From Entomortierella parvispora E1425 (Eukaryota > Fungi > Mortierellomycota), in assembly GCA_020891255.1 (NCBI GenBank), contig BQFW01000002.1:1302001-1366000 (forward strand): DNA of 64,000 bases, given 5' to 3'. The notes beneath the pieces were generated by a model. The model searched no databases and was not told the DNA's origin. It saw nothing but the letters and a program-made list of their open reading frames with translations. Numbering within the stretch: position 1 is the first letter of the stretch; every line of letters starts with the position of its first letter. The position numbers were made by a program, and so were the translations under genes. Shown here in pieces: positions 53,872 through 64,000 of the stretch.

Positions 53872-55485
53872 TTACATGTCTTCCGTGCTCCACATGTGAG
53901 CCTCCATCGCGCTGTGCTTCTTTGCATTCATTCGCTACAAGAGAAAAAAAAAGCAGTTATTGCAAATGAAGAGTACGAGTTAGCTTGGTTTCCATTATGT
54001 GCACTTGCAAAAGATATAAAACACTACGAAAGAAATTACCTGGAAATAATCCTTCTCGAAGCCAGTGGAGCGATCGACTCCATCCCAGCGATAGCCTGGC
54101 CGGATGTTGAACCGGTTGGGTGGGAACGATCCCTGGTATTGTGGGTATTTCGGTGCAGATTTCTTTGACTTTTTCACTCCTGTCAAGAAGCGCGCGGCAG
54201 GGTCATTCCAACGCTCTCGGTCCTTGAGTTCCTCGTTCAAATCCTCGTCGTCCTTGTAGCGGGCCAAGGGCTTGAGCTTTTCCTCTTCTTCCCGCTTCTT
54301 TCGTTCCTGTTCTTCCTCGCGCTGTACAAGACCCCTGCCCCACTCCATCATCTTTTCTTGCTTCTCCAGCTCTTTCTTGGCGGCCGCGGCCTTTTCAATC
54401 TTTTCCTGGACACGGTCAATTTTACGACCTTGAGCATCACGGTAAACGGTCTCTGCATCACGTCCACTCTTGGCAGGATCCAAAGCGCGCATGCGTGCTT
54501 CTTCTTCTCTCCTTTTCCGCTCCAGCTCCCGTCTTCCTTCCTGTGCTGTCTGAAGTCCCACCACAGGCCGGATGGGCTCTAGAGATGGCGAGCGGGAGCG
54601 AGATCTCGAGGGCGATCGGTTCCGTCTCTTGGGAGAAGGCGATCTTGGGGAGAAGGACCGTTGGCGAGACCTGGATGCGTAGGGTGAAGGTGATCTGCTG
54701 GACCTCTGTCTTTGATTCCGTGATGACCAGGGTGAGGGAGATCTGGACCTGTTTCTCTTTCGTCCTTCTGGAGAAAACGACCTCTGACGTTGCCCTTCCT
54801 GTTTCGTTGGCGGTGAGGTTGCCCTCCACTTTTCTACTGGTTTCGAGCTCTTTTTGACAGGGTTCCTGAGGCGTGCTGATGTTTCGCTTTCTACCACTAT
54901 TGACATTACCGATATTGAAAAGGAGGGATATCCAGTTAGTGTCCATGGCGCTACTCTTGCTCTTGTCCAGTATATATATATAAAAGACTAGAAGCTCTTA
55001 CCAATGCCTGCAATAGCAGGACGTTCATCCTCATTATCGACATCGTCCCATTCGGGCACATGGTTTCTCTGAGGTTGCTGTGGTTCCTGCGGCTCCCCTT
55101 CCCGAACAGTCTCCCAGTTACTCGAGTTTGATTTGTATGCAGGAGCCTTCTTTTCCTCTACTGCTGGTACTATTCAGAAACAAAGAAACAAAATAGAGTG
55201 TTAGAGACCATGACGGCGCTCAAGGGTCACGTCATACAGCCAAAATGAAATGAAGGGGAAGGCTATAATAAAAACTACGTTACAGTAGTCGTCCTCTGAT
55301 TCTGAAGCGGGATTGTTCCAAGAGACTTCATCCTCGTCATGGATAGCAAAGTTGCCCTTGCGGACGGTGGTCTTTGCCGAGGACGAAGACTTTTTCTTTT
55401 TGGATTTCTTTTTCCGGTAGTCGTCTGTGGATGAGGATGAGGGTTTTGACATGTATTTGCTGAGATAGTCCTTTGTTGACGACAT
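53872..55485 (-). CDS. BUD13: RES-complex splicing factor Bud13/Cwc26
   Basis: MSSTKDYLSKYM; RS-rich middle; ETVYRDAQGRKID; WGRGLVQ; RWNDPAARFL; NRFNIRPGYRWDGVDRSTGFE; last exon HMWSTEDM*. Confidence 0.96.
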
Positions 55486-56350: not shown

Positions 56351-58134
56351 ATGCGCTCCTCTTTCACCCTCGCAGCCACGACTGTCCTCGTCGCCTCCTC
56401 CCTCTTCATGGCCAGCAGCGTCGAGGCCCAGCAGCTCTGCAACGGATATGCAGCGCTCTGCTCTAAGCAATACAGCCAGGTCGCCTATGCCACCACCCAC
56501 AACGCCTACGCTTTCACGCCTGCGGGTTCTCGCCCTGCCCTGGCTGCCAACCAGGACAATAACATCACCACGCAGCTCAAAGATGGCATTCGCGCCCTCA
56601 TGCTCGATGCCTACAATGTCCCCTCGGGCAACCCCGATGACATTGAGCTCTGCCACACCTCGTGTAAGAAATGGAGACAGCTCCTTTTCCACATCCCCTT
56701 CATCCCGCTCTCTTTTTTTTTTGTTTGTTTATTCGACAGAAACAGCCTGGGCGGCTCTTCTCTGCTCTTTGTTTTCTCGTTCCTGCTTCTGTTCAGTTTT
56801 GCATCCCCACTCAAGAGCAACACAGCCCTTTGAAAAATGACAACCTGCCATTTACCAACACGCCACATTCTCGCCCCACCTGCACTGTCAATTGCTCTGT
56901 ATCGCTAATCGTCGCCTACTTTTTGCCTGTCTGGTTATTTTTAGGCACCCTCTTTGATGGTGGTCTTTTGTCTACGACTCTGGCCGAGATCAAGACTTTT
57001 ATGGAAGCGAACCCCAACGAAGTCATTACCATCTTTTGGGAGAATGCTGGCAACCTCACCCCAGCTCACTTTCAGGTACAGTTTGTCAAGAGGAAAAGAA
57101 GAAGAAAATGAAAATGAAAAGGAACGACGAGAAAGATGGAAGGAACAAAGTAGACCCTCACTGTGCCTCGTTGTTTTTCTTCTTGCTGTTGATATGTTTA
57201 CCGTTTTGTCCTTGTCCTGCATCCCTCAACTCCTTTATTTTCGGACCTTTTTTTTTTTTGTTTTTATATAGATTGTTTACCAAGCGGCTGGCATGGTGGA
57301 TTATTCATACACTCAACCCGTTGGTAACAACACCTGGCCTACCTTGGCCGAGATGATCTCGAGCGGGAAGCGTCTTGTCAGCTATCTGGATGACGGTGCC
57401 GATGCCTCGGTTCCATGGTAAGAACAAAAATCAAAAACTAAAAAACATATGAGACCCGGGAGAGCAGGAGTAGGAGGGGGGATATCGTTTATCCACTTAT
57501 CCACTCGTGATAACACCCTTCTCCACAGCCCTGGATCGAGATGATCCAGGCCAGACGCACGCGCAGTTGTGGCGCAGAACAGGAGGGAAACCAAAAACAG
57601 CAATGCAATGTTTCGTACATTAATTGCGCCCCTGTTTTTTTTTTTTTTTTTTTTTTTTTCGCTCCACCTAGGCTGATGGCCGAGTACGACTTTATCTTTG
57701 AGACGCCCTATGCGATCCCCACAGGAGGACCTTACCTTTGCACAGTTGACCGTCCTAGGGATCAGCGCAAGTCGATGTATGTGCTCAACCACTTTGTCTC
57801 TGGCAATTTGACATTGGATGGCGTTGTGGTCGATATCCCCCAGCCTGGAGCAGCCTTGCAGACCAACGGAGCAGCTCTGGTCTCGCACGTCAACAACTGT
57901 ACGCAAGTCTTTAGCCAGAGTGCCAGTTTTATTGCTGTGGACTTTTATGAGAAGGGCTCGGTGATGCAGACGGTTGCCCAGGTGAACGGAGTCACGTTCA
58001 ATGGTATCTTGCCAACCCAGCCCACAAACTCGACCAGCGGCGCGTCTTCTACCACCCCACACATGGGAGGATTCTCCAAGGAGTCTGTCGCCATGGCAGT
58101 GGCAGCCGTCTTTATGGCTGTCATGGCTCTTTAG
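56351..58134 (+). CDS. Secreted, GPI-type PI-PLC X-domain-like phosphodiesterase
   Basis: Signal peptide; LCNGYAALCSKQYSQVAYATTHNAYA; QLKDGIRALMLD; NPNEVITIFWEN; SFIAVDFY; hydrophobic C-terminal tail; four introns. Confidence 0.9.
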
Positions 58135-59094
58135 ATTTCTGTTAGAGATGAGATGAAACTGCGCCTGCAAAAAAAGAATGCACGTTGCAGAGATACCACA
58201 CCTCAGCCGCTTTTTTAACCCCACGCCTTTACGCCACTCATGTATATAAAATAAAAAAAAAGTTCTTGCTACCCTTTTTATGACGAAGGTGCCTTTCCCC
58301 TCCTTTGGAGGATTGTACGAGCCGTGGGCCAGTTCAGTGGTACCTGCAGGTTCGCAATCCTCCGCTTTCTCCGTTGCAAAAGGAGAGTCAATGGCCTCCA
58401 AGTAGACACCTCCGTGACCCGCGCAAAGTATCAACTGTTTCTTACATCCAGCTTTTGAAACATGCTTCCTTGGTCTTGCGGGTTTGCGCTTTGGGATCGT
58501 TTCTCTATCTCCCATTCTCCCTCTCTATTTGACTCTGACTCTCCCACTCTCTCTCTCTCTCTCCCTCTCCTCTCGTTCTCTTTGCCTTTCTTGCTCTCTG
58601 TGTCACTGTGGCTGCATTGCTGCCTTCAACACACCAACAACACATGGCCAAACAAATCACCCAGCCCTGAAATTACACAAATTACGACAACCGTGCCCTG
58701 GGATGGATCAATCCCCGGGGTTGAACACAAATGTCTGTGCGGCGATCGACGCGCACTATCCGTAGTGAGGATGAATGTCATCTAGGAAACGCGTCCCTTT
58801 CCTTTCGTTCTTGGTTCTCCCTGGAGTGATCAGTGCTTGGAAAAAGGAGGAGGGAAAATGAGGAGAGAAAAGGAGGGAGAGGATAACTATATAAAGCTCT
58901 CTTTCTGACTTTCTTCATTTCAAGGATCCAATGAACCTCCTGATCTCACATTGACACGACCTGTCCGGACCTGTGTGCCATGCTCACCGTTCATCATCGA
59001 AAAAGCGTGGTCAGCAAGGCTTCGAGAGGCGTCGATGCCGAGTCTGTTATCGGGGCTATTGAGGTGAACCAAAGAGCAGACAACAAGACGGACG

Positions 59095-59133
<39 letters not shown>

Positions 59134-59940
59134 GCGGCAAAATAATAACAAAAAAAAAAAAAAAAAAACAAAAAAAAACGAAAAGAGACGACCCCGTTAT
59201 TGATGAGAGGCAGAGTAATCCGTTGTATGCACGACTCATCCCATAAGAAAACACACACATGCAATCGAAACGAAGATTTTCTGTAAAGGGCTTACTGATA
59301 CTCTTGGGCACCTCTTTTCTTTCTTTTCCTTTCCCCTTCTTCCTCAGGAGTTGTTGCCCGACCGAGGCCAAAAAAAGAGACTGGACCATTCATTTCACAT
59401 GGAGGTTTTTTTTTATTTTTTAAAGGACAGGCAGAGTCCACCAACACCGAACATGGTCGACCCAACAGTGTCAACACCCAAGTCGTTTTGGGCACCCCCG
59501 GCTCCCTTTCCCTCGCAGACTCCCTCTTCCTATCGCCACCTTCTCTCTTTCTCTCTCTCTCTTTTTTTTCTTTCCTCAAGAAATATAAACGACGCGTCCG
59601 GGACTCCATCCCCTTGTTCTTCACTTTTACCTTTTCTTCCCTTTTTCTCTCCCCCTGGTCGCTTTTCCTTCTCCTGGTACCCGCTTTCGTAACTTTTTAC
59701 AACCAACCCATTTCAGCAGTTCACTCTCTTTCCTCTCTTTTCGAATCACACGACCATTTTTTGTCTTCTCTTTCTCTCTCTCCTTTACCTTCCTCTTCCC
59801 CTTCTTCCCGCTAGTCTCCTCCGCCCCCCAGCACATCTGTCATCCTTCTACGAAACAAAGCCCCACACCCATATAGTGCTGATATCTCTCTAGAGCACAA
59901 TACACAAGAGACAAGAACTTCACATACACACATACACGCC

Positions 59941-61048
59941 ATGCACATTCTCTCGTCCACATACGCGATCGTCGCGTTCACGACCCTCTCCACAGTCCTG
60001 CAAATGGGCCCCTCTCACTCTGCCATCACTGGGGTCGAGGCTCATTCATGGTTGGATTGTGTCAATTGGGTCATCAAAAACCCAAGCAAAGGCCTCTGGG
60101 TCGCTGGGGCTGGAGAATGCAGAGGGTTTGCCCGTCGGTACCCCAAAGGGAGCGAGTTTGGGACCTTGGACCATGCCAGCCCCTCTCGTCATTATCAACA
60201 AAAGGGCCCGCATCCCGAGAAGGAGCTGCCTTGTTCTGATCACAAACACGGTCAGGATGTCGGCGCAGACGAAACAAGGGGTAACCCGGTCTCGTCTGCC
60301 TATGGTGGTAAATGGGGCGAGATGACGACGGTCCTCGTGGGGGATGAACTCTGTGTGCGATGGCCGGCCAAGAACCACGCCGAGAAGAATGAAGACAACA
60401 CCGTCGTTCAAATCAATCTCTCCAAAAACAAGGATGGCAAGGACCCCACCCAATTGCAATTGTTGGAGAACACGATCGCGAAATTGCCTTACAAGAACTG
60501 CAGTTCGGCCAGTACTCCGGACAGACGGCCCTGCGGTGGTTGTTTCAAGGTCCCTCCCCGGCTTTCGGGTATTTATCTCCTGCAATGGCGATGGATGTTG
60601 AACCCAGGCGAGTGGTACACCTCTTGCGCGGTAAGTGACACGAGAAAGAAAGGAGGAAAGGGGATCGGAGAATAGGAGGGATAAAATGAAGGAAGACCTT
60701 GACTGACATGGACGTGTTTTCTTCCTTGCCTTCCTTTGCTTTTATCGCTTTTAGGATATTCAAATCGGCAACAGTGCGTCTGGCTCCAGCGGTGTAGGCC
60801 AGATAGAGCCCATTGTCGACAATGGCAGTGACGATAACGGTGGCAATTCGTCGTCGTCGGACGATGACGACCACAAGCAAGATGATGATGACAACAAGAA
60901 AAAGAAAAAGAACCATGACGACGACAAGGACGACGACGATGAGGACGACAAGAAAAAGAAAAAGAAGCACCATGACGACGACAACGATGACGATGATGAG
61001 GACGATGACGACCATCATGGCAAAGACAAGAAACACAAGCATCATTAA
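59941..61048 (+). CDS. Secreted LPMO-like (His-brace) protein, paralog 1, with Asp/Lys/His-rich tail
   Basis: Signal peptide ending VEA|HSWLDC (His codon 60043); WPAKNH (His codon 60376); YLLQWRW; EWYTSCA|DIQI across GT-AG intron 60631-60754; stop at 61046-61048. Confidence 0.75.
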
Positions 61049-61230
61049 GATCTCTACACCTACTTTTATACTATGATATTTTTTTTTCTCCCCCACATAC
61101 TCTTTTCATGAGCACAGACCTTTATCGCATCCTACACCCTTCTCCCCACCTCCCCTTCCTCCCAAATGGGCCATCCCATCAGTGTAATTTGGCAGTTTGA
61201 ATTCATTTTTTCATGTTCATAACGTAGCAG

Positions 61231-61261
61231 AAGGGCCTGCATTGCCACAGTGCAGGCCCTT
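61231..61261. other. Perfect 11-bp hairpin about 180 bp downstream of paralog 1
   Basis: AAGGGCCTGCA-TTGCCACAG-TGCAGGCCCTT. Confidence 0.6.
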
Positions 61262-61335
61262 TAATCATTCTTCATCATAAAGCATTTTCTCGTTGATTTC
61301 ACCCTCTGCTGACTCTCCTCTCTGGCACTTTTCTT

Positions 61336-61379
<44 letters not shown>

Positions 61380-63317
61380 CAACTTCTCGAATGAAGGAGA
61401 ACAAGGGCAGGGCCAAATCCAATTGCTCTTAAGCTAGAGACCACCTCGACCTGGCTAAGCGCAAACTATTTACCCAGCACCTGTCGCCGTTTGACAAAAG
61501 CGCTGTTCCCGAGGAGAAGAAGGCTAGGAGAGCACCTTTTTTTTTTCTTGGATCTGAGAGCATTCACAAACAAGTTTTTTTGTCCGTTTAGGCACCCCTC
61601 CTTCTCCGGGGTTTGTCCAAACCTTGTGGAGTTGTGCTCCTGTTGACAATTTATTGTGGCCATTTCTTTTGTTGTTTTTTTTCTCCCTCTTTTCGTGATC
61701 TCCTTCTCCTTCTCCTTTCCGCTGCTTCCATTGTGAGGGAGAAGAGGGGCCTTGCTTATTTGCCTCGACAGCTGAGAGCCTTGAACTAGGGATGAAAAAA
61801 ATAAAATAATAACAGATGTTGACCATCACCATTACCTTCTCGTCTGACCTGCCAACACTTCCGTTCGTGGAGCACATTGACCTGTGGGCACTCGACGAGT
61901 CGAGATAACAACAAAAAGGTGGGGAAGGCGAAATGAGGGGTGTGGAAATAGCCCGAAGGGGGGGAGGGTATCACGGTAGGCAGGAAACGGAGGAATGTGC
62001 GCCGTGCCAAATGAACGCCAGAACCACCCTGCTATTGTAGTTTTTCCAGGAGATTTGAATCCACGATCGTTTAGAAAGATCGACTTGATTAATTGGTCTT
62101 AAGGATGTCCCGGATACTGGGTCCATCTCTCCACGCAACTCCGGCCATGGCTTACAGCAGCACTGACCGAGGTCATTGGAGGCCAATGCTCTCTGCTTGC
62201 TCGCCGTTATCTTTTATATAAGCCGAGACCACTAGAGATGAGCAAGTTTGTGAGTGGGACAGACATGCGAAAGTGGATTGAGACACTAATAATTAACGGC
62301 AGAAAACAGGTGTTCGGTTTCTTGCTGCACGGAATCTCCATAGTGCTGCAATCCGACAGTGGCAAAGGGATCTCCGCCAAGGCCGGCGTTCATGTTGGGG
62401 AAAGGAGTGGGCGTACAAGCTAGAGGACATGGACAATAAATAGACATAAGACTATGTCGTAGGGATACAAAGAGGCAGAGACTCGTACCGTTGAGGTAGG
62501 AGATTGACTGCAGACACACTTGCATCCATCTAAAAACACTCGACCCAAGTACAAGGTCCAGACTCGGCAGATCCTTTCCGCCTTCCAATCAATCGGATGG
62601 ACGAGATGGAGTGTGCTTTTGGGCTTGGACAAGGCGCCGCCCTGGCGGATGCCAGTGGACGACTTGGAAAGTCGGCCATGGGCCAACCACAAGAGAAAGA
62701 AAACGAGGGACAGAGAGAGAGAGAGAGATTGAAGGATAGGGGCCTCTCCGGCAGAAAAGCAGCAGCGGCAGATCCTCAAAGATGCTCACTTTTCTGATAA
62801 AAATAATTGTCCTTGTTTCTCGTCGTTCGATCGACTTCATTTTTTTCTTCTTTTTAGGTCTTGTTCTGTGACCATGTTGTGGATACCGAGAATTAACGTT
62901 TTCTTTCTTTTTCTTTCACAGCTGCTCTCAAAGGTCAATAGGCTAACGAAGAAAGTCTTTTCCCTCCTTCTCTTCACGGCTGTTGTTGCCCTGACACGCT
63001 CAAATGGCCAGCGCCCAACACTAAAGTACTGTAATTTTTACTCGGAGGCACCTGTTGCAGGAGGAATGAATACCCATTCCTCAAGGTTGTCAGTCAATCA
63101 AGAAGAACCTGTCATGTTTGTATAAAAGCTGGCAATGTCGCCAGGCACGCGCGTCTTTCTTTTCTTTTTTCCCCTTGTCAATCCCCCTTCCCCCACACTT
63201 TACCCCTCACGCTACTCGTCTTAGCATACCCACCTCCTCTCACCTCGCCTTCATATCTCACGACCTCCCTCTCATCCCCTCCTCTGCCACCTACCCAAAA
63301 CTCGCGCACAACTCATC

Positions 63318-64000
63318 ATGGTTCTCAAGTCCACCTTCACTTTTATCGCTGTGGCCGCTTTGGCCATCTTCACCGCTGCCCCCCAGCAGGCGGATGCTCA
63401 CTCTTGGGCTGACTGCATTGACTGGAAGTTCAAAAACTCCAAGAACGGCGTTGCTGGCAAGCAGGGCCAGGACTGGAGTGACAATCAGGGCAAGTGCCAG
63501 GGTTACGCTCGTCGTTACCCCTTGAACAAGGCCTTTGGCTCCTTGGACTCTGCCTACCCCAGCCGTCATTACCAGCAGGTCAACAAGAACCCCGACAGCG
63601 CCCTCCCTTGCTCCAACCGCAAGGCCGGTAAGGAGCCCGGTTCGGACGAGACCCGTGCCAACCCCGTCTCCAAGGCCTATGGTGGCAAGTTTGGTCGCAT
63701 GACCGTCACCACCGTCGGTGACACCCTCTGCGTTCGCTGGCCCGCCAAGAACCACGCGGCCAAGAACGAGAAGAACCTCCCTGTTTACATCAACCTGTCC
63801 AAGGTCCGCAACGGCAAGGACATTAGCCAGAAGGAGTTGCTCAAGAACAACATTGCCAAGCTTCCTTACAAGAACTGCCGTCCCGGAAAGAACGAGGACC
63901 GTCGTGCCTGCGGTGGATGCTTCAAGGTCCCCGTCCGTGCCGCCGGTGTCTACTTGCTTCAGTGGCGCTGGATGTTGAACAAGAACGAGTGGTACACTTC
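63318..64000 (+). CDS. Secreted LPMO-like (His-brace) protein, paralog 2 (3' end off-window; absent from the ORF track)
   Basis: MVLKSTFTFIAVAALAIFTAAPQQADA|HSWADCIDW...CVRWPAKNH...CGGCFKVP...YLLQWRWMLNKNEWYT; open to base 64000; colinear with paralog 1. Confidence 0.8.
   Translation, partial: MVLKSTFTFIAVAALAIFTAAPQQADAHSWADCIDWKFKNSKNGVAGKQGQDWSDNQGKCQGYARRYPLNKAFGSLDSAYPSRHYQQVNKNPDSALPCSNRKAGKEPGSDETRANPVSKAYGGKFGRMTVTTVGDTLCVRWPAKNHAAKNEKNLPVYINLSKVRNGKDISQKELLKNNIAKLPYKNCRPGKNEDRRACGGCFKVPVRAAGVYLLQWRWMLNKNEWYT

What the first reader, a model, noticed from the sequence alone, without database searches (positions are those of the whole stretch)
59941..64000. Tandem pair of secreted proteins with an LPMO-type copper-site signature but an atypical HSW N-terminus
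Seen: two paralogs (59941-61048 and 63318-64000+). Each has a signal peptide whose likely cleavage exposes His as residue 1 (EA|HSW, DA|HSW), a second conserved His in CVRWPAKNH about 110-120 residues later, a YLLQWRW strand and E-W-Y-T-S; paralog 1 continues C-A-DI, while the window ends inside paralog 2's motif. Conserved Cys residues are present. Established: LPMOs (AA9-AA11, AA13-AA17) bind Cu through His1 and an internal His, with an axial Tyr/Phe in a (Q/E)-x-(Y/F)-x-x-C-A-D-like motif. Inference: this is an LPMO-fold copper protein family. I do not recognise HSW(L/A)DC as the start of a named AA family, so it may be unclassified, acting on chitin/chitosan or another wall polysaccharide, or in copper handling like X325 proteins.
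Basis: partly seen in the sequence, partly recalled or inferred. Interest (0 to 1): 0.85.

Follow-up and report, generated by a model that had tools for sequence, protein, structure and literature searches.

The report
Unclassified LPMO-like copper protein pair
Two neighbouring genes of this soil fungus encode secreted proteins built like the copper enzymes that cut chitin and cellulose by oxidation (LPMOs), but they belong to a widespread family that no curated LPMO model covers and that nobody seems to have tested.

Summary
Paralog 1 (59941-61048, one GT..AG intron at 60631-60754, 327 aa) and paralog 2 (63318 to beyond the window end, 238 aa) are real genes. They are identical to deposited Entomortierella parvispora proteins.

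Both have a signal peptide followed by His-Ser-Trp, a second invariant His in WPAKNH, and an invariant Tyr in E-W-Y-T-S-C-A-D. Across 104 relatives at 24-84% identity, two His and one Tyr (H1 of the mature protein, H146, Y226) are invariant, with Ser2, four Cys, Pro142, Gly210 and Trp218.

AlphaFold models (pLDDT 85 and 91) match only LPMOs. AA10 scores Z 10.8-11.4, AA15 10-11, AA13 about 10, AA11 9-10, AA9 8-10 and X325 7.5. The first His lands on His1 of every LPMO.

No Pfam family is met. Relatives link the family to Pfam DUF7492. Kin occur in Mortierellaceae (many copies, in conserved tandem pairs) and dictyostelid and other amoebae, with structural neighbours in AlphaFold DB and many relatives of unknown origin in metagenomes.

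Most likely this is an uncharacterised LPMO-type histidine-brace copper family. Catalysis and substrate are inferred, not shown. CAZy/dbCAN could not be queried.

UniProt's automatic names already call some members LPMO-like. The scan noted a similar tandem pair on another piece of this genome. For paralog 1, cleavage exactly before His35 is less certain because its signal peptide has a long c-region.

The parts
59941..61048 (+). Paralog 1 gene (327 aa, = P0292 / EMPS_01296): exon 1 59941-60630, intron 60631-60754, exon 2 60755-61048 (stop TAA at 61046-61048)
   Evidence: ORF and sequence. 100% identical to the deposited protein over exon 1. Exon 2 matches residues 231-327 at 100% by tblastn.
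59941..60042 (+). Paralog 1 signal peptide (residues 1-34), with an unusually long c-region (QMGPSHSAITGVEA). Predicted cleavage is VEA|H.
   Evidence: The -3/-1 rule is met (V, A). These residues are disordered in the model, and the fold starts at His35. The alignment shows an 8-residue insertion relative to most kin. SignalP was not available.
60043..60051 (+). His35-Ser36-Trp37: predicted N-terminus of mature paralog 1. His35 is the candidate His1 of the histidine brace.
   Evidence: H and S are invariant in 104 sequences. Model residue 35 is aligned on His1 of all LPMO structures.
60376..60378 (+). His146 of paralog 1 (in WPAKNH): candidate second histidine of the brace
   Evidence: Invariant in A1, A2, A3 and A4. 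The 111-residue spacing from His1 resembles that of ScLPMO10C (109; figure recalled, not tested).
60610..60630 (+). Glu224-Trp-Tyr226-Thr-Ser-Cys-Ala: E-x-Y motif giving the candidate axial Tyr and second-sphere Glu. It continues D-I-Q-I after the intron.
   Evidence: Y226 and C229 are invariant. End-of-alignment offsets place Y226 on the axial Tyr/Phe of AA10, AA11, AA13 and AA15 structures. Those residue numbers are from memory.
60773..61045 (+). Disordered C-terminal tail of paralog 1 (91 aa; 35 Asp/Glu, 17 Lys/Arg, 9 His; pI 4.5; ends KHKHH)
   Evidence: Composition. No Pfam domain found. Kin of the same clade carry Gly/Lys-rich tails, several ending in His.
63318..64000 (+). Paralog 2 gene (238 aa, = P0050), cut by the window end after residue 227. 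No intron in the part seen. The mature protein is strongly basic (pI 9.8).
   Evidence: Translation. 100% identical to P0050. pI.
63318..63398 (+). Paralog 2 signal peptide (residues 1-27), with canonical A-D-A|H cleavage
   Evidence: The h-region forms a helix at residues 5-19 in the model. The -3/-1 rule is met.
63399..63401 (+). His28 of paralog 2: candidate His1
   Evidence: Model residue 28 is aligned on His1 of all LPMO chains.
63753..63755 (+). His146 of paralog 2: candidate second brace histidine
   Evidence: Invariant column.
63993..63995 (+). Tyr226 of paralog 2: candidate axial tyrosine
   Evidence: Invariant column. Offset mapping.

Best explanation
Both genes encode secreted, disulfide-rich members of an uncharacterised family of LPMO-type mono-copper proteins.

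Proposed mechanism:
1. Signal-peptide cleavage exposes His as residue 1.
2. The amino terminus and side chain of His1, together with His146, form a histidine brace that holds one Cu.
3. Tyr226 sits axially and Glu224 lies in the second sphere.
4. After reduction to Cu(I), the site activates H2O2 or O2 on a flat face. It then oxidises C1 or C4 of a wall polysaccharide, breaking the chain.

The most likely substrates are chitin or chitosan, given the chitin-degrading lifestyle I recall for Mortierellaceae. Cellulose or beta-glucan remain possible for the amoebozoan kin.

The pair is an old tandem duplication kept across Mortierellaceae. The copies differ in charge and tail, which suggests different targets or localisation. 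Paralog 1 has a domain pI of 8.4 plus an acidic Asp/Lys/His tail. Paralog 2 has a pI of 9.8 and almost no tail.

Shown here: the gene models, the secretion signal, the LPMO fold, His1 superposition, and invariance of His/His/Tyr. Inferred: copper binding, catalysis and substrate.
For: Fold:
- Foldseek against PDB returns almost only LPMOs, all of the 40 best rows except PmoD, another copper-binding protein; the best is AA10 at E 2e-4.
- A Foldseek-independent scan of 48,161 chains puts 24 LPMO or LPMO-like entries on top. Scores are AA10 Z 10.8, AA15 9.9, AA13 9.7, AA11 8.9, AA9 8.9, X325 7.5, AA16 7.0, AA14 6.8. Unrelated sandwiches score 6.1 or less.
- The second model (pLDDT 90.8) gives Z 11.4 and 11.0.

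Active-site residues:
- Residue 35 (paralog 1) or 28 (paralog 2) aligns to His1 in every family.
- H1, S2, H146, Y226 and four Cys are invariant in 104 sequences down to 24% identity.
- The (small)-x-(small)|HS[WFY] start recurs in most representative clusters that hold the N-terminal part.
- Alignment offsets put Y226 on Phe219 of ScLPMO10C, Phe187 of CBP21, Tyr184 of TdAA15A, Tyr224 of AoAA13 and Tyr140 of AoAA11 (residue numbers recalled from the literature).
- Glu224 fits the E-x-(Y/F) second-sphere motif.

Context:
- One relative carries a CBM1-like module.
- Language-model and structure neighbours are LPMO_10, DUF7492, BIM1-like and AA14 clusters.
- Tandem pairs of other Mortierellaceae species mostly split into the two clades that hold the window's paralogs.
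- A 659-nt contig, 93% identical over 63320-63978, lies in a soil metatranscriptome library.
Against: - There is no biochemical evidence of any kind.
The Tyr mapping rests on remembered residue numbers and an ungapped last strand.
- Z of about 10-11 and 9-21% identity is a distant match.
- The paralog 1 signal peptide has a 13-14 residue c-region. An alternative small-x-small site (SHS|A, after residue 27) would leave seven extra residues and destroy the brace.
- Glu224 is not conserved in all distant kin (Q, D or S in some).
- Some distant kin have hydrophobic C-termini that look like membrane or GPI anchors, as non-catalytic X325 proteins do.
- No RNA run of the organism itself was listed. 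RNA libraries can also contain DNA.
Confidence: 0.6

Rival explanations
1. Non-catalytic LPMO-like copper-binding proteins, like X325/Bim1. They would bind Cu with the same brace but serve copper capture or delivery, or wall homeostasis, rather than polysaccharide cleavage. The Asp/His-rich tail of paralog 1 would add metal-binding capacity.
For: - X325 is among the structural matches (LaX325, Z 7.5). A BIM1-like cluster is among the Atlas neighbours.
- Several distant kin end in hydrophobic, anchor-like C-termini.
- The paralog 1 tail has 9 His and 35 acidic residues.
- The family has many copies per genome and no known substrate.
Against: - X325 is clearly further away (Z 7.5) than the catalytic AA10, AA15 and AA13 families (Z about 10-11).
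- The Pfam BIM1-like domain is not matched.
- The window proteins and the aligned Mortierellaceae kin show no anchor-like C-terminus.
- The E-x-Y second-sphere motif typical of active LPMOs is kept.
- One relative has a CBM1-like module.
Confidence: 0.2
2. Divergent members of an existing CAZy family, most plausibly AA11 as called by dbCAN-type pipelines, or AA10/AA15. On this reading the family is not new, only poorly covered by Pfam.
For: - A survey of zygomycete secretomes reports AA11 enrichment in Mortierellomycotina (PMC9391592).
- UniProt's automatic names for members are 'Chitin-binding type-4 domain-containing protein' and 'Lytic polysaccharide monooxygenase'.
- An Ascomycota LPMO_10 cluster is the third nearest by language-model features, at 0.89.
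Against: - Pfam LPMO_10 hits only 2 of 71 members, at E about 0.008 and below threshold, and none of the window proteins.
- AA11 structures score lower (Z 8.8-10.1, 128-143 residues aligned, 15-21% identity) than AA10 and AA15.
- None of the 50 Foldseek rows listed is labelled AA11.
- The family profile finds no solved LPMO by sequence.
- His1-His2 spacing is 111-118 residues, against about 60 in AoAA11 (from memory).
Confidence: 0.15
3. Secreted beta-sandwich proteins that only share the immunoglobulin-like LPMO scaffold. They would be metal-free, for example structural wall proteins or carbohydrate binders.
For: The structural Z scores are moderate. The tool notes that a best Z of 7-8 is common for models with no true match.
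Against: - Every hit above the background step is an LPMO.
- The alignments start exactly at the post-signal His in all families.
- Among His and Tyr residues, exactly the two His and one Tyr expected for a brace are invariant over 104 sequences. A scaffold-only relationship would not predict this.
Confidence: 0.05

Closest known systems
AA10 LPMOs (e.g. ScLPMO10C/CelS2 4oy7, CBP21 2bem)
   Same: Best structural match (Z 10.8-11.4, 145-158 residues aligned), with His1 superposed. The C-terminal motif is of the same kind, W-x-W ... E-x-(F/Y)-x-x-C-x-D. The His1-His2 spacing of about 110 residues is like that of cellulose-active AA10s (recalled).
   Different: Sequence identity is only 7-18%. 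Pfam LPMO_10 is not met. Residue 2 is an invariant Ser where I recall Gly. The axial residue is Tyr, where most AA10s have Phe (recalled). The mature domain has eight Cys, so up to four disulfides if all pair. The family is eukaryotic.
AA15 LPMOs (TdAA15A, 5msz)
   Same: Z 9.9-11.0, with His1 superposed and an axial Tyr. Both are eukaryotic.
   Different: 14-17% identity. No LPMO_10 match. Different N-terminal and His2 motifs.
AA11 LPMOs (AoAA11 4mai, FfAA11 7p3u, AfAA11B 9exj)
   Same: Both are fungal. The E-x-Y-x-x-C-x-D type motif and an axial Tyr are shared. AA11 is reported as enriched in Mortierellomycotina secretomes (PMC9391592). Z is 8.8-10.1.
   Different: Only 126-143 residues align at 15-21% identity. 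AA11 has a much shorter His1-His2 segment (about 60 residues, recalled, against 111-118 here). The Pfam model that covers the Ascomycota LPMO_10 cluster does not match.
Pfam DUF7492 (PF24320), uncharacterised proteins commonest in Ascomycota
   Same: 41 of 71 family members match it at E of 0.1 or better (best 6e-9). One (P0182) passes the curated cut-off and is itself hit by the Mortierellaceae profile at 5e-21. DUF7492 models are structural neighbours.
   Different: The window proteins do not match the model even at E of 10 or below. Mortierellaceae kin match only below threshold and only at the two ends of the profile. DUF7492 has no described function, and no paper in the library mentions it.
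X325 / Bim1 LPMO-like copper proteins (LaX325, 6ibh)
   Same: LPMO-like fold with an N-terminal His. They are secreted fungal proteins. Z is 7.5.
   Different: X325 is further away than the catalytic families. There is no BIM1-like Pfam match. The window proteins have no GPI-like C-terminus. The domain is larger (about 200 aa against about 130-150).

Membership tests
LPMO superfamily (histidine-brace copper fold) | Immunoglobulin-like beta-sandwich LPMO fold | tested here: met
   Two AF2 models (pLDDT 84.7 and 90.8). The top 24 of 48,161 chains are all LPMO or LPMO-like.
LPMO superfamily (histidine-brace copper fold) | His as residue 1 of the mature protein | tested here: inconclusive
   His directly follows a signal peptide with small residues at -3 and -1, across most of the family, and it superposes on His1. 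SignalP and N-terminal sequencing were not available. Paralog 1 has an atypically long c-region with an alternative site.
LPMO superfamily (histidine-brace copper fold) | Second His and axial Tyr/Phe converging on His1 to form the Cu site | not testable with these tools
   Coordinates of the models are not returned. Indirect support comes from the invariance of H146 and Y226 and from alignment offsets that place Y226 on the axial residue of five families.
LPMO superfamily (histidine-brace copper fold) | Copper binding and oxidative cleavage of a polysaccharide | not testable with these tools
   Needs protein expression, ICP-MS/EPR and product analysis.
AA10 / AA11 / AA15 (as covered by Pfam LPMO_10, PF03067) | Significant match to the LPMO_10 model | tested here: not met
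   No hit for the window proteins at E of 10 or below. 2 of 71 relatives match at E about 0.008, below the cut-off.
AA9 (PF03443) | Significant match to the AA9 model | tested here: not met
   Only E of 0.01-0.03 in a few relatives, at 14.8 bits against a cut-off of 27.8.
AA14 (PF22810), X325/BIM1-like (PF20238), Egh16-like (PF11327) | Match to the family model | tested here: not met
   None is listed for the window proteins, and none is among the 25 families shown for the 71 relatives. They appear only as distant Atlas neighbours.
Pfam DUF7492 (PF24320) | Match above the curated cut-off (27 bits) | tested here: not met
   The window proteins have no hit. Close kin score 22.9-25.1 bits. Distant kin reach 31.3 bits. 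The relationship is real but the window proteins lie outside the model.
CAZy AA families by dbCAN/CAZy assignment | Assignment by the CAZy curators or dbCAN HMMs | not testable with these tools
   No CAZy or dbCAN library is available here. Papers list AA9-AA11 and AA13-AA18 as the LPMO families, and none found describes this one.

The most novel reading that the evidence does not exclude
These proteins are founding members of a new CAZy auxiliary-activity family of catalytically active LPMOs. Its signature would be the HS(W/F), WPAKNH and W-x-W-x-x-N-x-x-E-x-Y-x-x-C motifs. It would be ancient in eukaryotes (Mortierellomycotina and Amoebozoa, possibly oomycetes and marine protists, and DUF7492 in Ascomycota), with a substrate or role not covered by AA9-AA18. 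One example would be remodelling of the organism's own chitosan, chitin or cellulose wall.
Probability: 0.4. Interest if true: 0.75.

Novelty: new variant of a known kind. Interest (0 to 1): 0.6.

Why it matters
As I recall, each newly defined LPMO family (AA11, AA13-AA17) brought new substrates, new biology or new tools for breaking down biomass. This family is large: 405 representative clusters at E of 0.001 or better. It reaches from a chitin-degrading soil fungal lineage to cellulose-making amoebae. It is invisible to the curated LPMO models tested here.

If it is active, three things follow:
- It would extend oxidative polysaccharide cleavage to early-diverging fungi and protists.
- It would give DUF7492 a function.
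- Surveys that rely on the curated LPMO models tested here would miss these candidates in soil data.

If it is a non-catalytic copper binder instead, it would be a second LPMO-like copper-handling family beside X325.

Tried and rejected
- Pfam on both proteins and on the tail gave nothing meaningful.
- phmmer and a family profile against all PDB sequences gave only chance hits to asparaginases.
- Literature searches for DUF7492, for LPMO with Mortierella, Mortierellomycotina or Dictyostelium, and for new LPMO families found no description of this family. AA18 exists. I take it to be an unrelated bacterial enzyme, from memory only.
- RNA evidence for the intron could not be obtained. No RNA run was listed for paralog 1. 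The runs laid were divergent strains or soil samples, and one contig ended near the exon 1 boundary without being interpretable.
- I looked for model coordinates to measure the Cu-site geometry, but none are provided.
- tblastn of family members against the window found no third copy or pseudogene.
- A profile-profile comparison with bona fide AA10 or AA11 alignments was not run. No such sequences could be obtained by reference, and typing them from memory would be unreliable.
- Neighbouring genes gave no functional link. Bud13 lies at 53995-54906, and the secreted protein upstream is unidentified.
Full report
**1. What is in the sequence**

The window is fungal DNA. The two proteins are 100% identical, over the parts the window holds, to two proteins on one 3.99-Mb contig. 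One of these (P0292, 327 aa) is deposited as an Entomortierella parvispora protein. The other is P0050 (238 aa).

Paralog 1 starts at 59941. The ORF would read through to 60675. However, a canonical intron (GTAAGT at 60631, TAG ending at 60754) joins ...EWYTSCA to DIQIG... This restores the family consensus CADIQIG and gives 230 + 97 = 327 aa, with the stop at 61046-61048. tblastn of P0292 finds both exons at 100%.

Paralog 2 starts at 63318 and runs off the window after residue 227. The full protein ends ...CADIQIGKKK. The two copies are about 55-57% identical. No third copy lies in the window.

**2. The motifs are real and conserved far beyond chance**

In 39 Mortierellaceae sequences, A-H-S after the signal peptide, H146 in WPAKNH, Q215/R217/W218 in LLQWRW, and Y226 in EWYTSC are invariant, along with several Cys.

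A profile search of 1.84 billion representatives found 405 clusters at E of 0.001 or better. Named ones include dictyostelids (Heterostelium, Acytostelium, Tieghemostelium) and Paradermamoeba. One cluster has a Tara Oceans member, and many others come from metagenomes of unknown origin.

Of the 149 listed hits scanned, about two thirds carry HS[W/F/Y] within their first 60 residues, typically as (small)-x-(A/G/S)|H-S-(W/F/Y)-x-x-C-x-(D/N) at residues 13-40. Most of those without it lack the N-terminal part of the family domain or are fragments.

In a 104-sequence alignment that reaches down to 24% identity, the invariant columns are H1 of the mature protein, S2, H146, Y226, four Cys, P142, G210 and W218. 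So exactly two His and one Tyr stay invariant, as a histidine brace with an axial Tyr would require.

**3. Fold**

The AlphaFold model of paralog 1 exon 1 has pLDDT 84.7. The signal peptide is disordered and the fold begins at His35. The model of full paralog 2, built from the 104-sequence alignment, has pLDDT 90.8.

- Foldseek against PDB returns almost only LPMOs among its best rows. AA10 is best at E 2e-4, and AA13, AA9, AA15 and AA16 follow.
- Foldseek against Swiss-Prot models returns only AA10, AA13 and AA9 entries.
- VIA-align gives Z 10.8 (ScLPMO10C), 10.2 (TdAA15A), 9.7 (AoAA13), 8.8 (AoAA11) and about 8 (AA9) for paralog 1.
- For paralog 2 it gives 11.4, 11.0, 10.6, 10.1 and 9.8.
- A Foldseek-independent scan of 48,161 chains puts 24 LPMO or LPMO-like entries on top, including X325 (7.5), AA16 (7.0), AA14 (6.8) and a Phytophthora oxidoreductase (6.3). 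Generic sandwiches begin at Z 6.1.

In nearly every row the alignment starts at His35 or His28 of the model and at His1 of the solved chain. The Burkholderia chain 3uam is the exception and starts two residues earlier.

The ends of the alignments place Y226 four residues before model position 230 in model 1, and at matching offsets in model 2. Using residue numbers I recall from the literature, this puts Y226 on Phe219 of ScLPMO10C, Phe187 of CBP21, Tyr184 of TdAA15A, Tyr224 of AoAA13 and Tyr140 of AoAA11. This is an inference.

**4. Family assignment**

- No Pfam family matches either protein, even at E of 10 or below.
- Neither a single sequence nor the family profile finds any solved structure by sequence.
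- Close kin hit DUF7492 at 23-25 bits (cut-off 27) and AA9 at about 15 bits.
- Of 71 diverse members, 41 hit DUF7492 (best 6e-9), 2 hit LPMO_10 (0.008) and 2 hit AA9.
- P0182 passes the DUF7492 cut-off and is hit by the Mortierellaceae profile at 5e-21. The family is therefore homologous to DUF7492 but lies largely outside that model.
- AlphaFold DB neighbours are an entry named 'Chitin-binding type-4 domain-containing protein' (29% identity, E 3e-13), several unnamed entries, and DUF7492 proteins. Organism names are masked in that output. From their accessions I take the first to be from Dictyostelium purpureum and some unnamed ones to be from oomycetes, but I did not check this.
- In the ESM Atlas the nearest clusters after the family's own two are an Ascomycota LPMO_10 cluster, then DUF7492, BIM1-like and AA14.

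UniProt's automatic names already call some members 'Chitin-binding type-4 domain-containing protein' or 'Lytic polysaccharide monooxygenase'. The resemblance has therefore been picked up by machines. Even so, I found no paper on the family or on DUF7492.

One caveat remains. A secretome survey reports AA11 enrichment in Mortierellomycotina (PMC9391592), and I cannot exclude that dbCAN labels these proteins AA11. Structurally, AA11 is not the nearest family, and its His1-His2 segment is about half as long (recalled).

**5. Evolution and context**

Adjacent locus tags show that many Mortierellaceae carry these genes in tandem. In a maximum-likelihood tree, most of these pairs split between a clade holding paralog 1 (support 89/88) and a clade holding paralog 2 (85/74). 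The duplication therefore appears to predate the genera sampled, although support is only moderate.

Paralog 2 has an 85% identical copy elsewhere in the genome (EMPS_10130). The scan's earlier notes describe another tandem pair of the same kind on another piece of this genome (s1-173329), so the scan has found this kind of pair before.

The mature domains are basic (pI 8.4 and 9.8). Paralog 1 adds a 91-aa disordered tail with 35 acidic, 17 basic and 9 His residues. Kin of its clade have Gly/Lys-rich tails, several ending in His.

Distant kin carry other extensions: a CBM1-like module (P0266), WW domains, TSP1/EGF modules and hydrophobic C-termini.

Neighbouring genes give no functional clue.

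**6. Expression**

No RNA run of the organism was listed. A soil metatranscriptome contig of 659 nt is 93% identical over 63320-63978. This is weak evidence that a close relative's copy is transcribed in soil, because RNA libraries can hold DNA.

**7. Signal-peptide caveat**

Paralog 2 has a textbook signal peptide, with an h-region helix at residues 5-19 and an A-D-A|H site.

Paralog 1 has an 8-residue insertion, so its c-region is 13-14 residues long. An alternative S-H-S|A site exists, and cleavage there would leave seven residues ahead of His35. My subjective estimate is that His is residue 1 with about 0.65 probability for paralog 1 and about 0.9 for paralog 2.

**8. Verdict**

This is a genuine, conserved tandem pair of secreted LPMO-fold proteins with a complete candidate histidine brace. 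They belong to a large eukaryotic family that the curated LPMO models tested here do not cover.

The most likely function is an LPMO-type copper oxidoreductase acting on a wall polysaccharide (0.6). A non-catalytic copper-binding role (0.2) and membership in an existing CAZy family (0.15) are the main rivals.

Noticed in passing
window 56351-58134 (+): Multi-exon gene for another secreted protein, with a signal peptide (MRSSFTLAATTVLVASSLFMASSVEA) and a hydrophobic, GPI-like C-terminus. Pfam gave nothing on two exon pieces. From memory it resembles PLC-like phosphodiesterase X-domain proteins.
   Followed up: partly
window 53995-54906 (-): Arg/Ser-rich protein with a Bud13 domain (pre-mRNA splicing, RES complex; E 6e-52).
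   Followed up: yes
P0134 (relative, not in the window): A family member (E 1e-66 to the Mortierellaceae profile) is deposited as a Marchantia paleacea protein on a 2.98-Mb contig. It could be a fungal contaminant scaffold or a fungus-to-liverwort transfer.
   Followed up: no
P0042 / EMPS_10130 (same genome, another contig): An 85% identical copy of paralog 2 sits on a different 2.26-Mb contig. The scan's note s1-173329 describes a tandem pair on another piece, which suggests a duplicated block.
   Followed up: partly
P0266, P0177 and other distant relatives: Some distant family members are fused to a CBM1-like module, to WW domains behind hydrophobic segments that may span the membrane, or to TSP1/EGF modules. 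Several end in hydrophobic, GPI-like tails.
   Followed up: partly
window 58500-59800 and 62650-62760: Long (CT)n/(GA)n-type simple repeats and strong CT skew in the intergenic and promoter regions (GC skew -0.585 at 59500-59999). They read as SLSLSL or ERERER in spurious ORFs.
   Followed up: no
window 63320-63978: A soil metatranscriptome library (run X4) holds a 659-nt contig 93% identical to paralog 2, at depth 37.
   Followed up: partly
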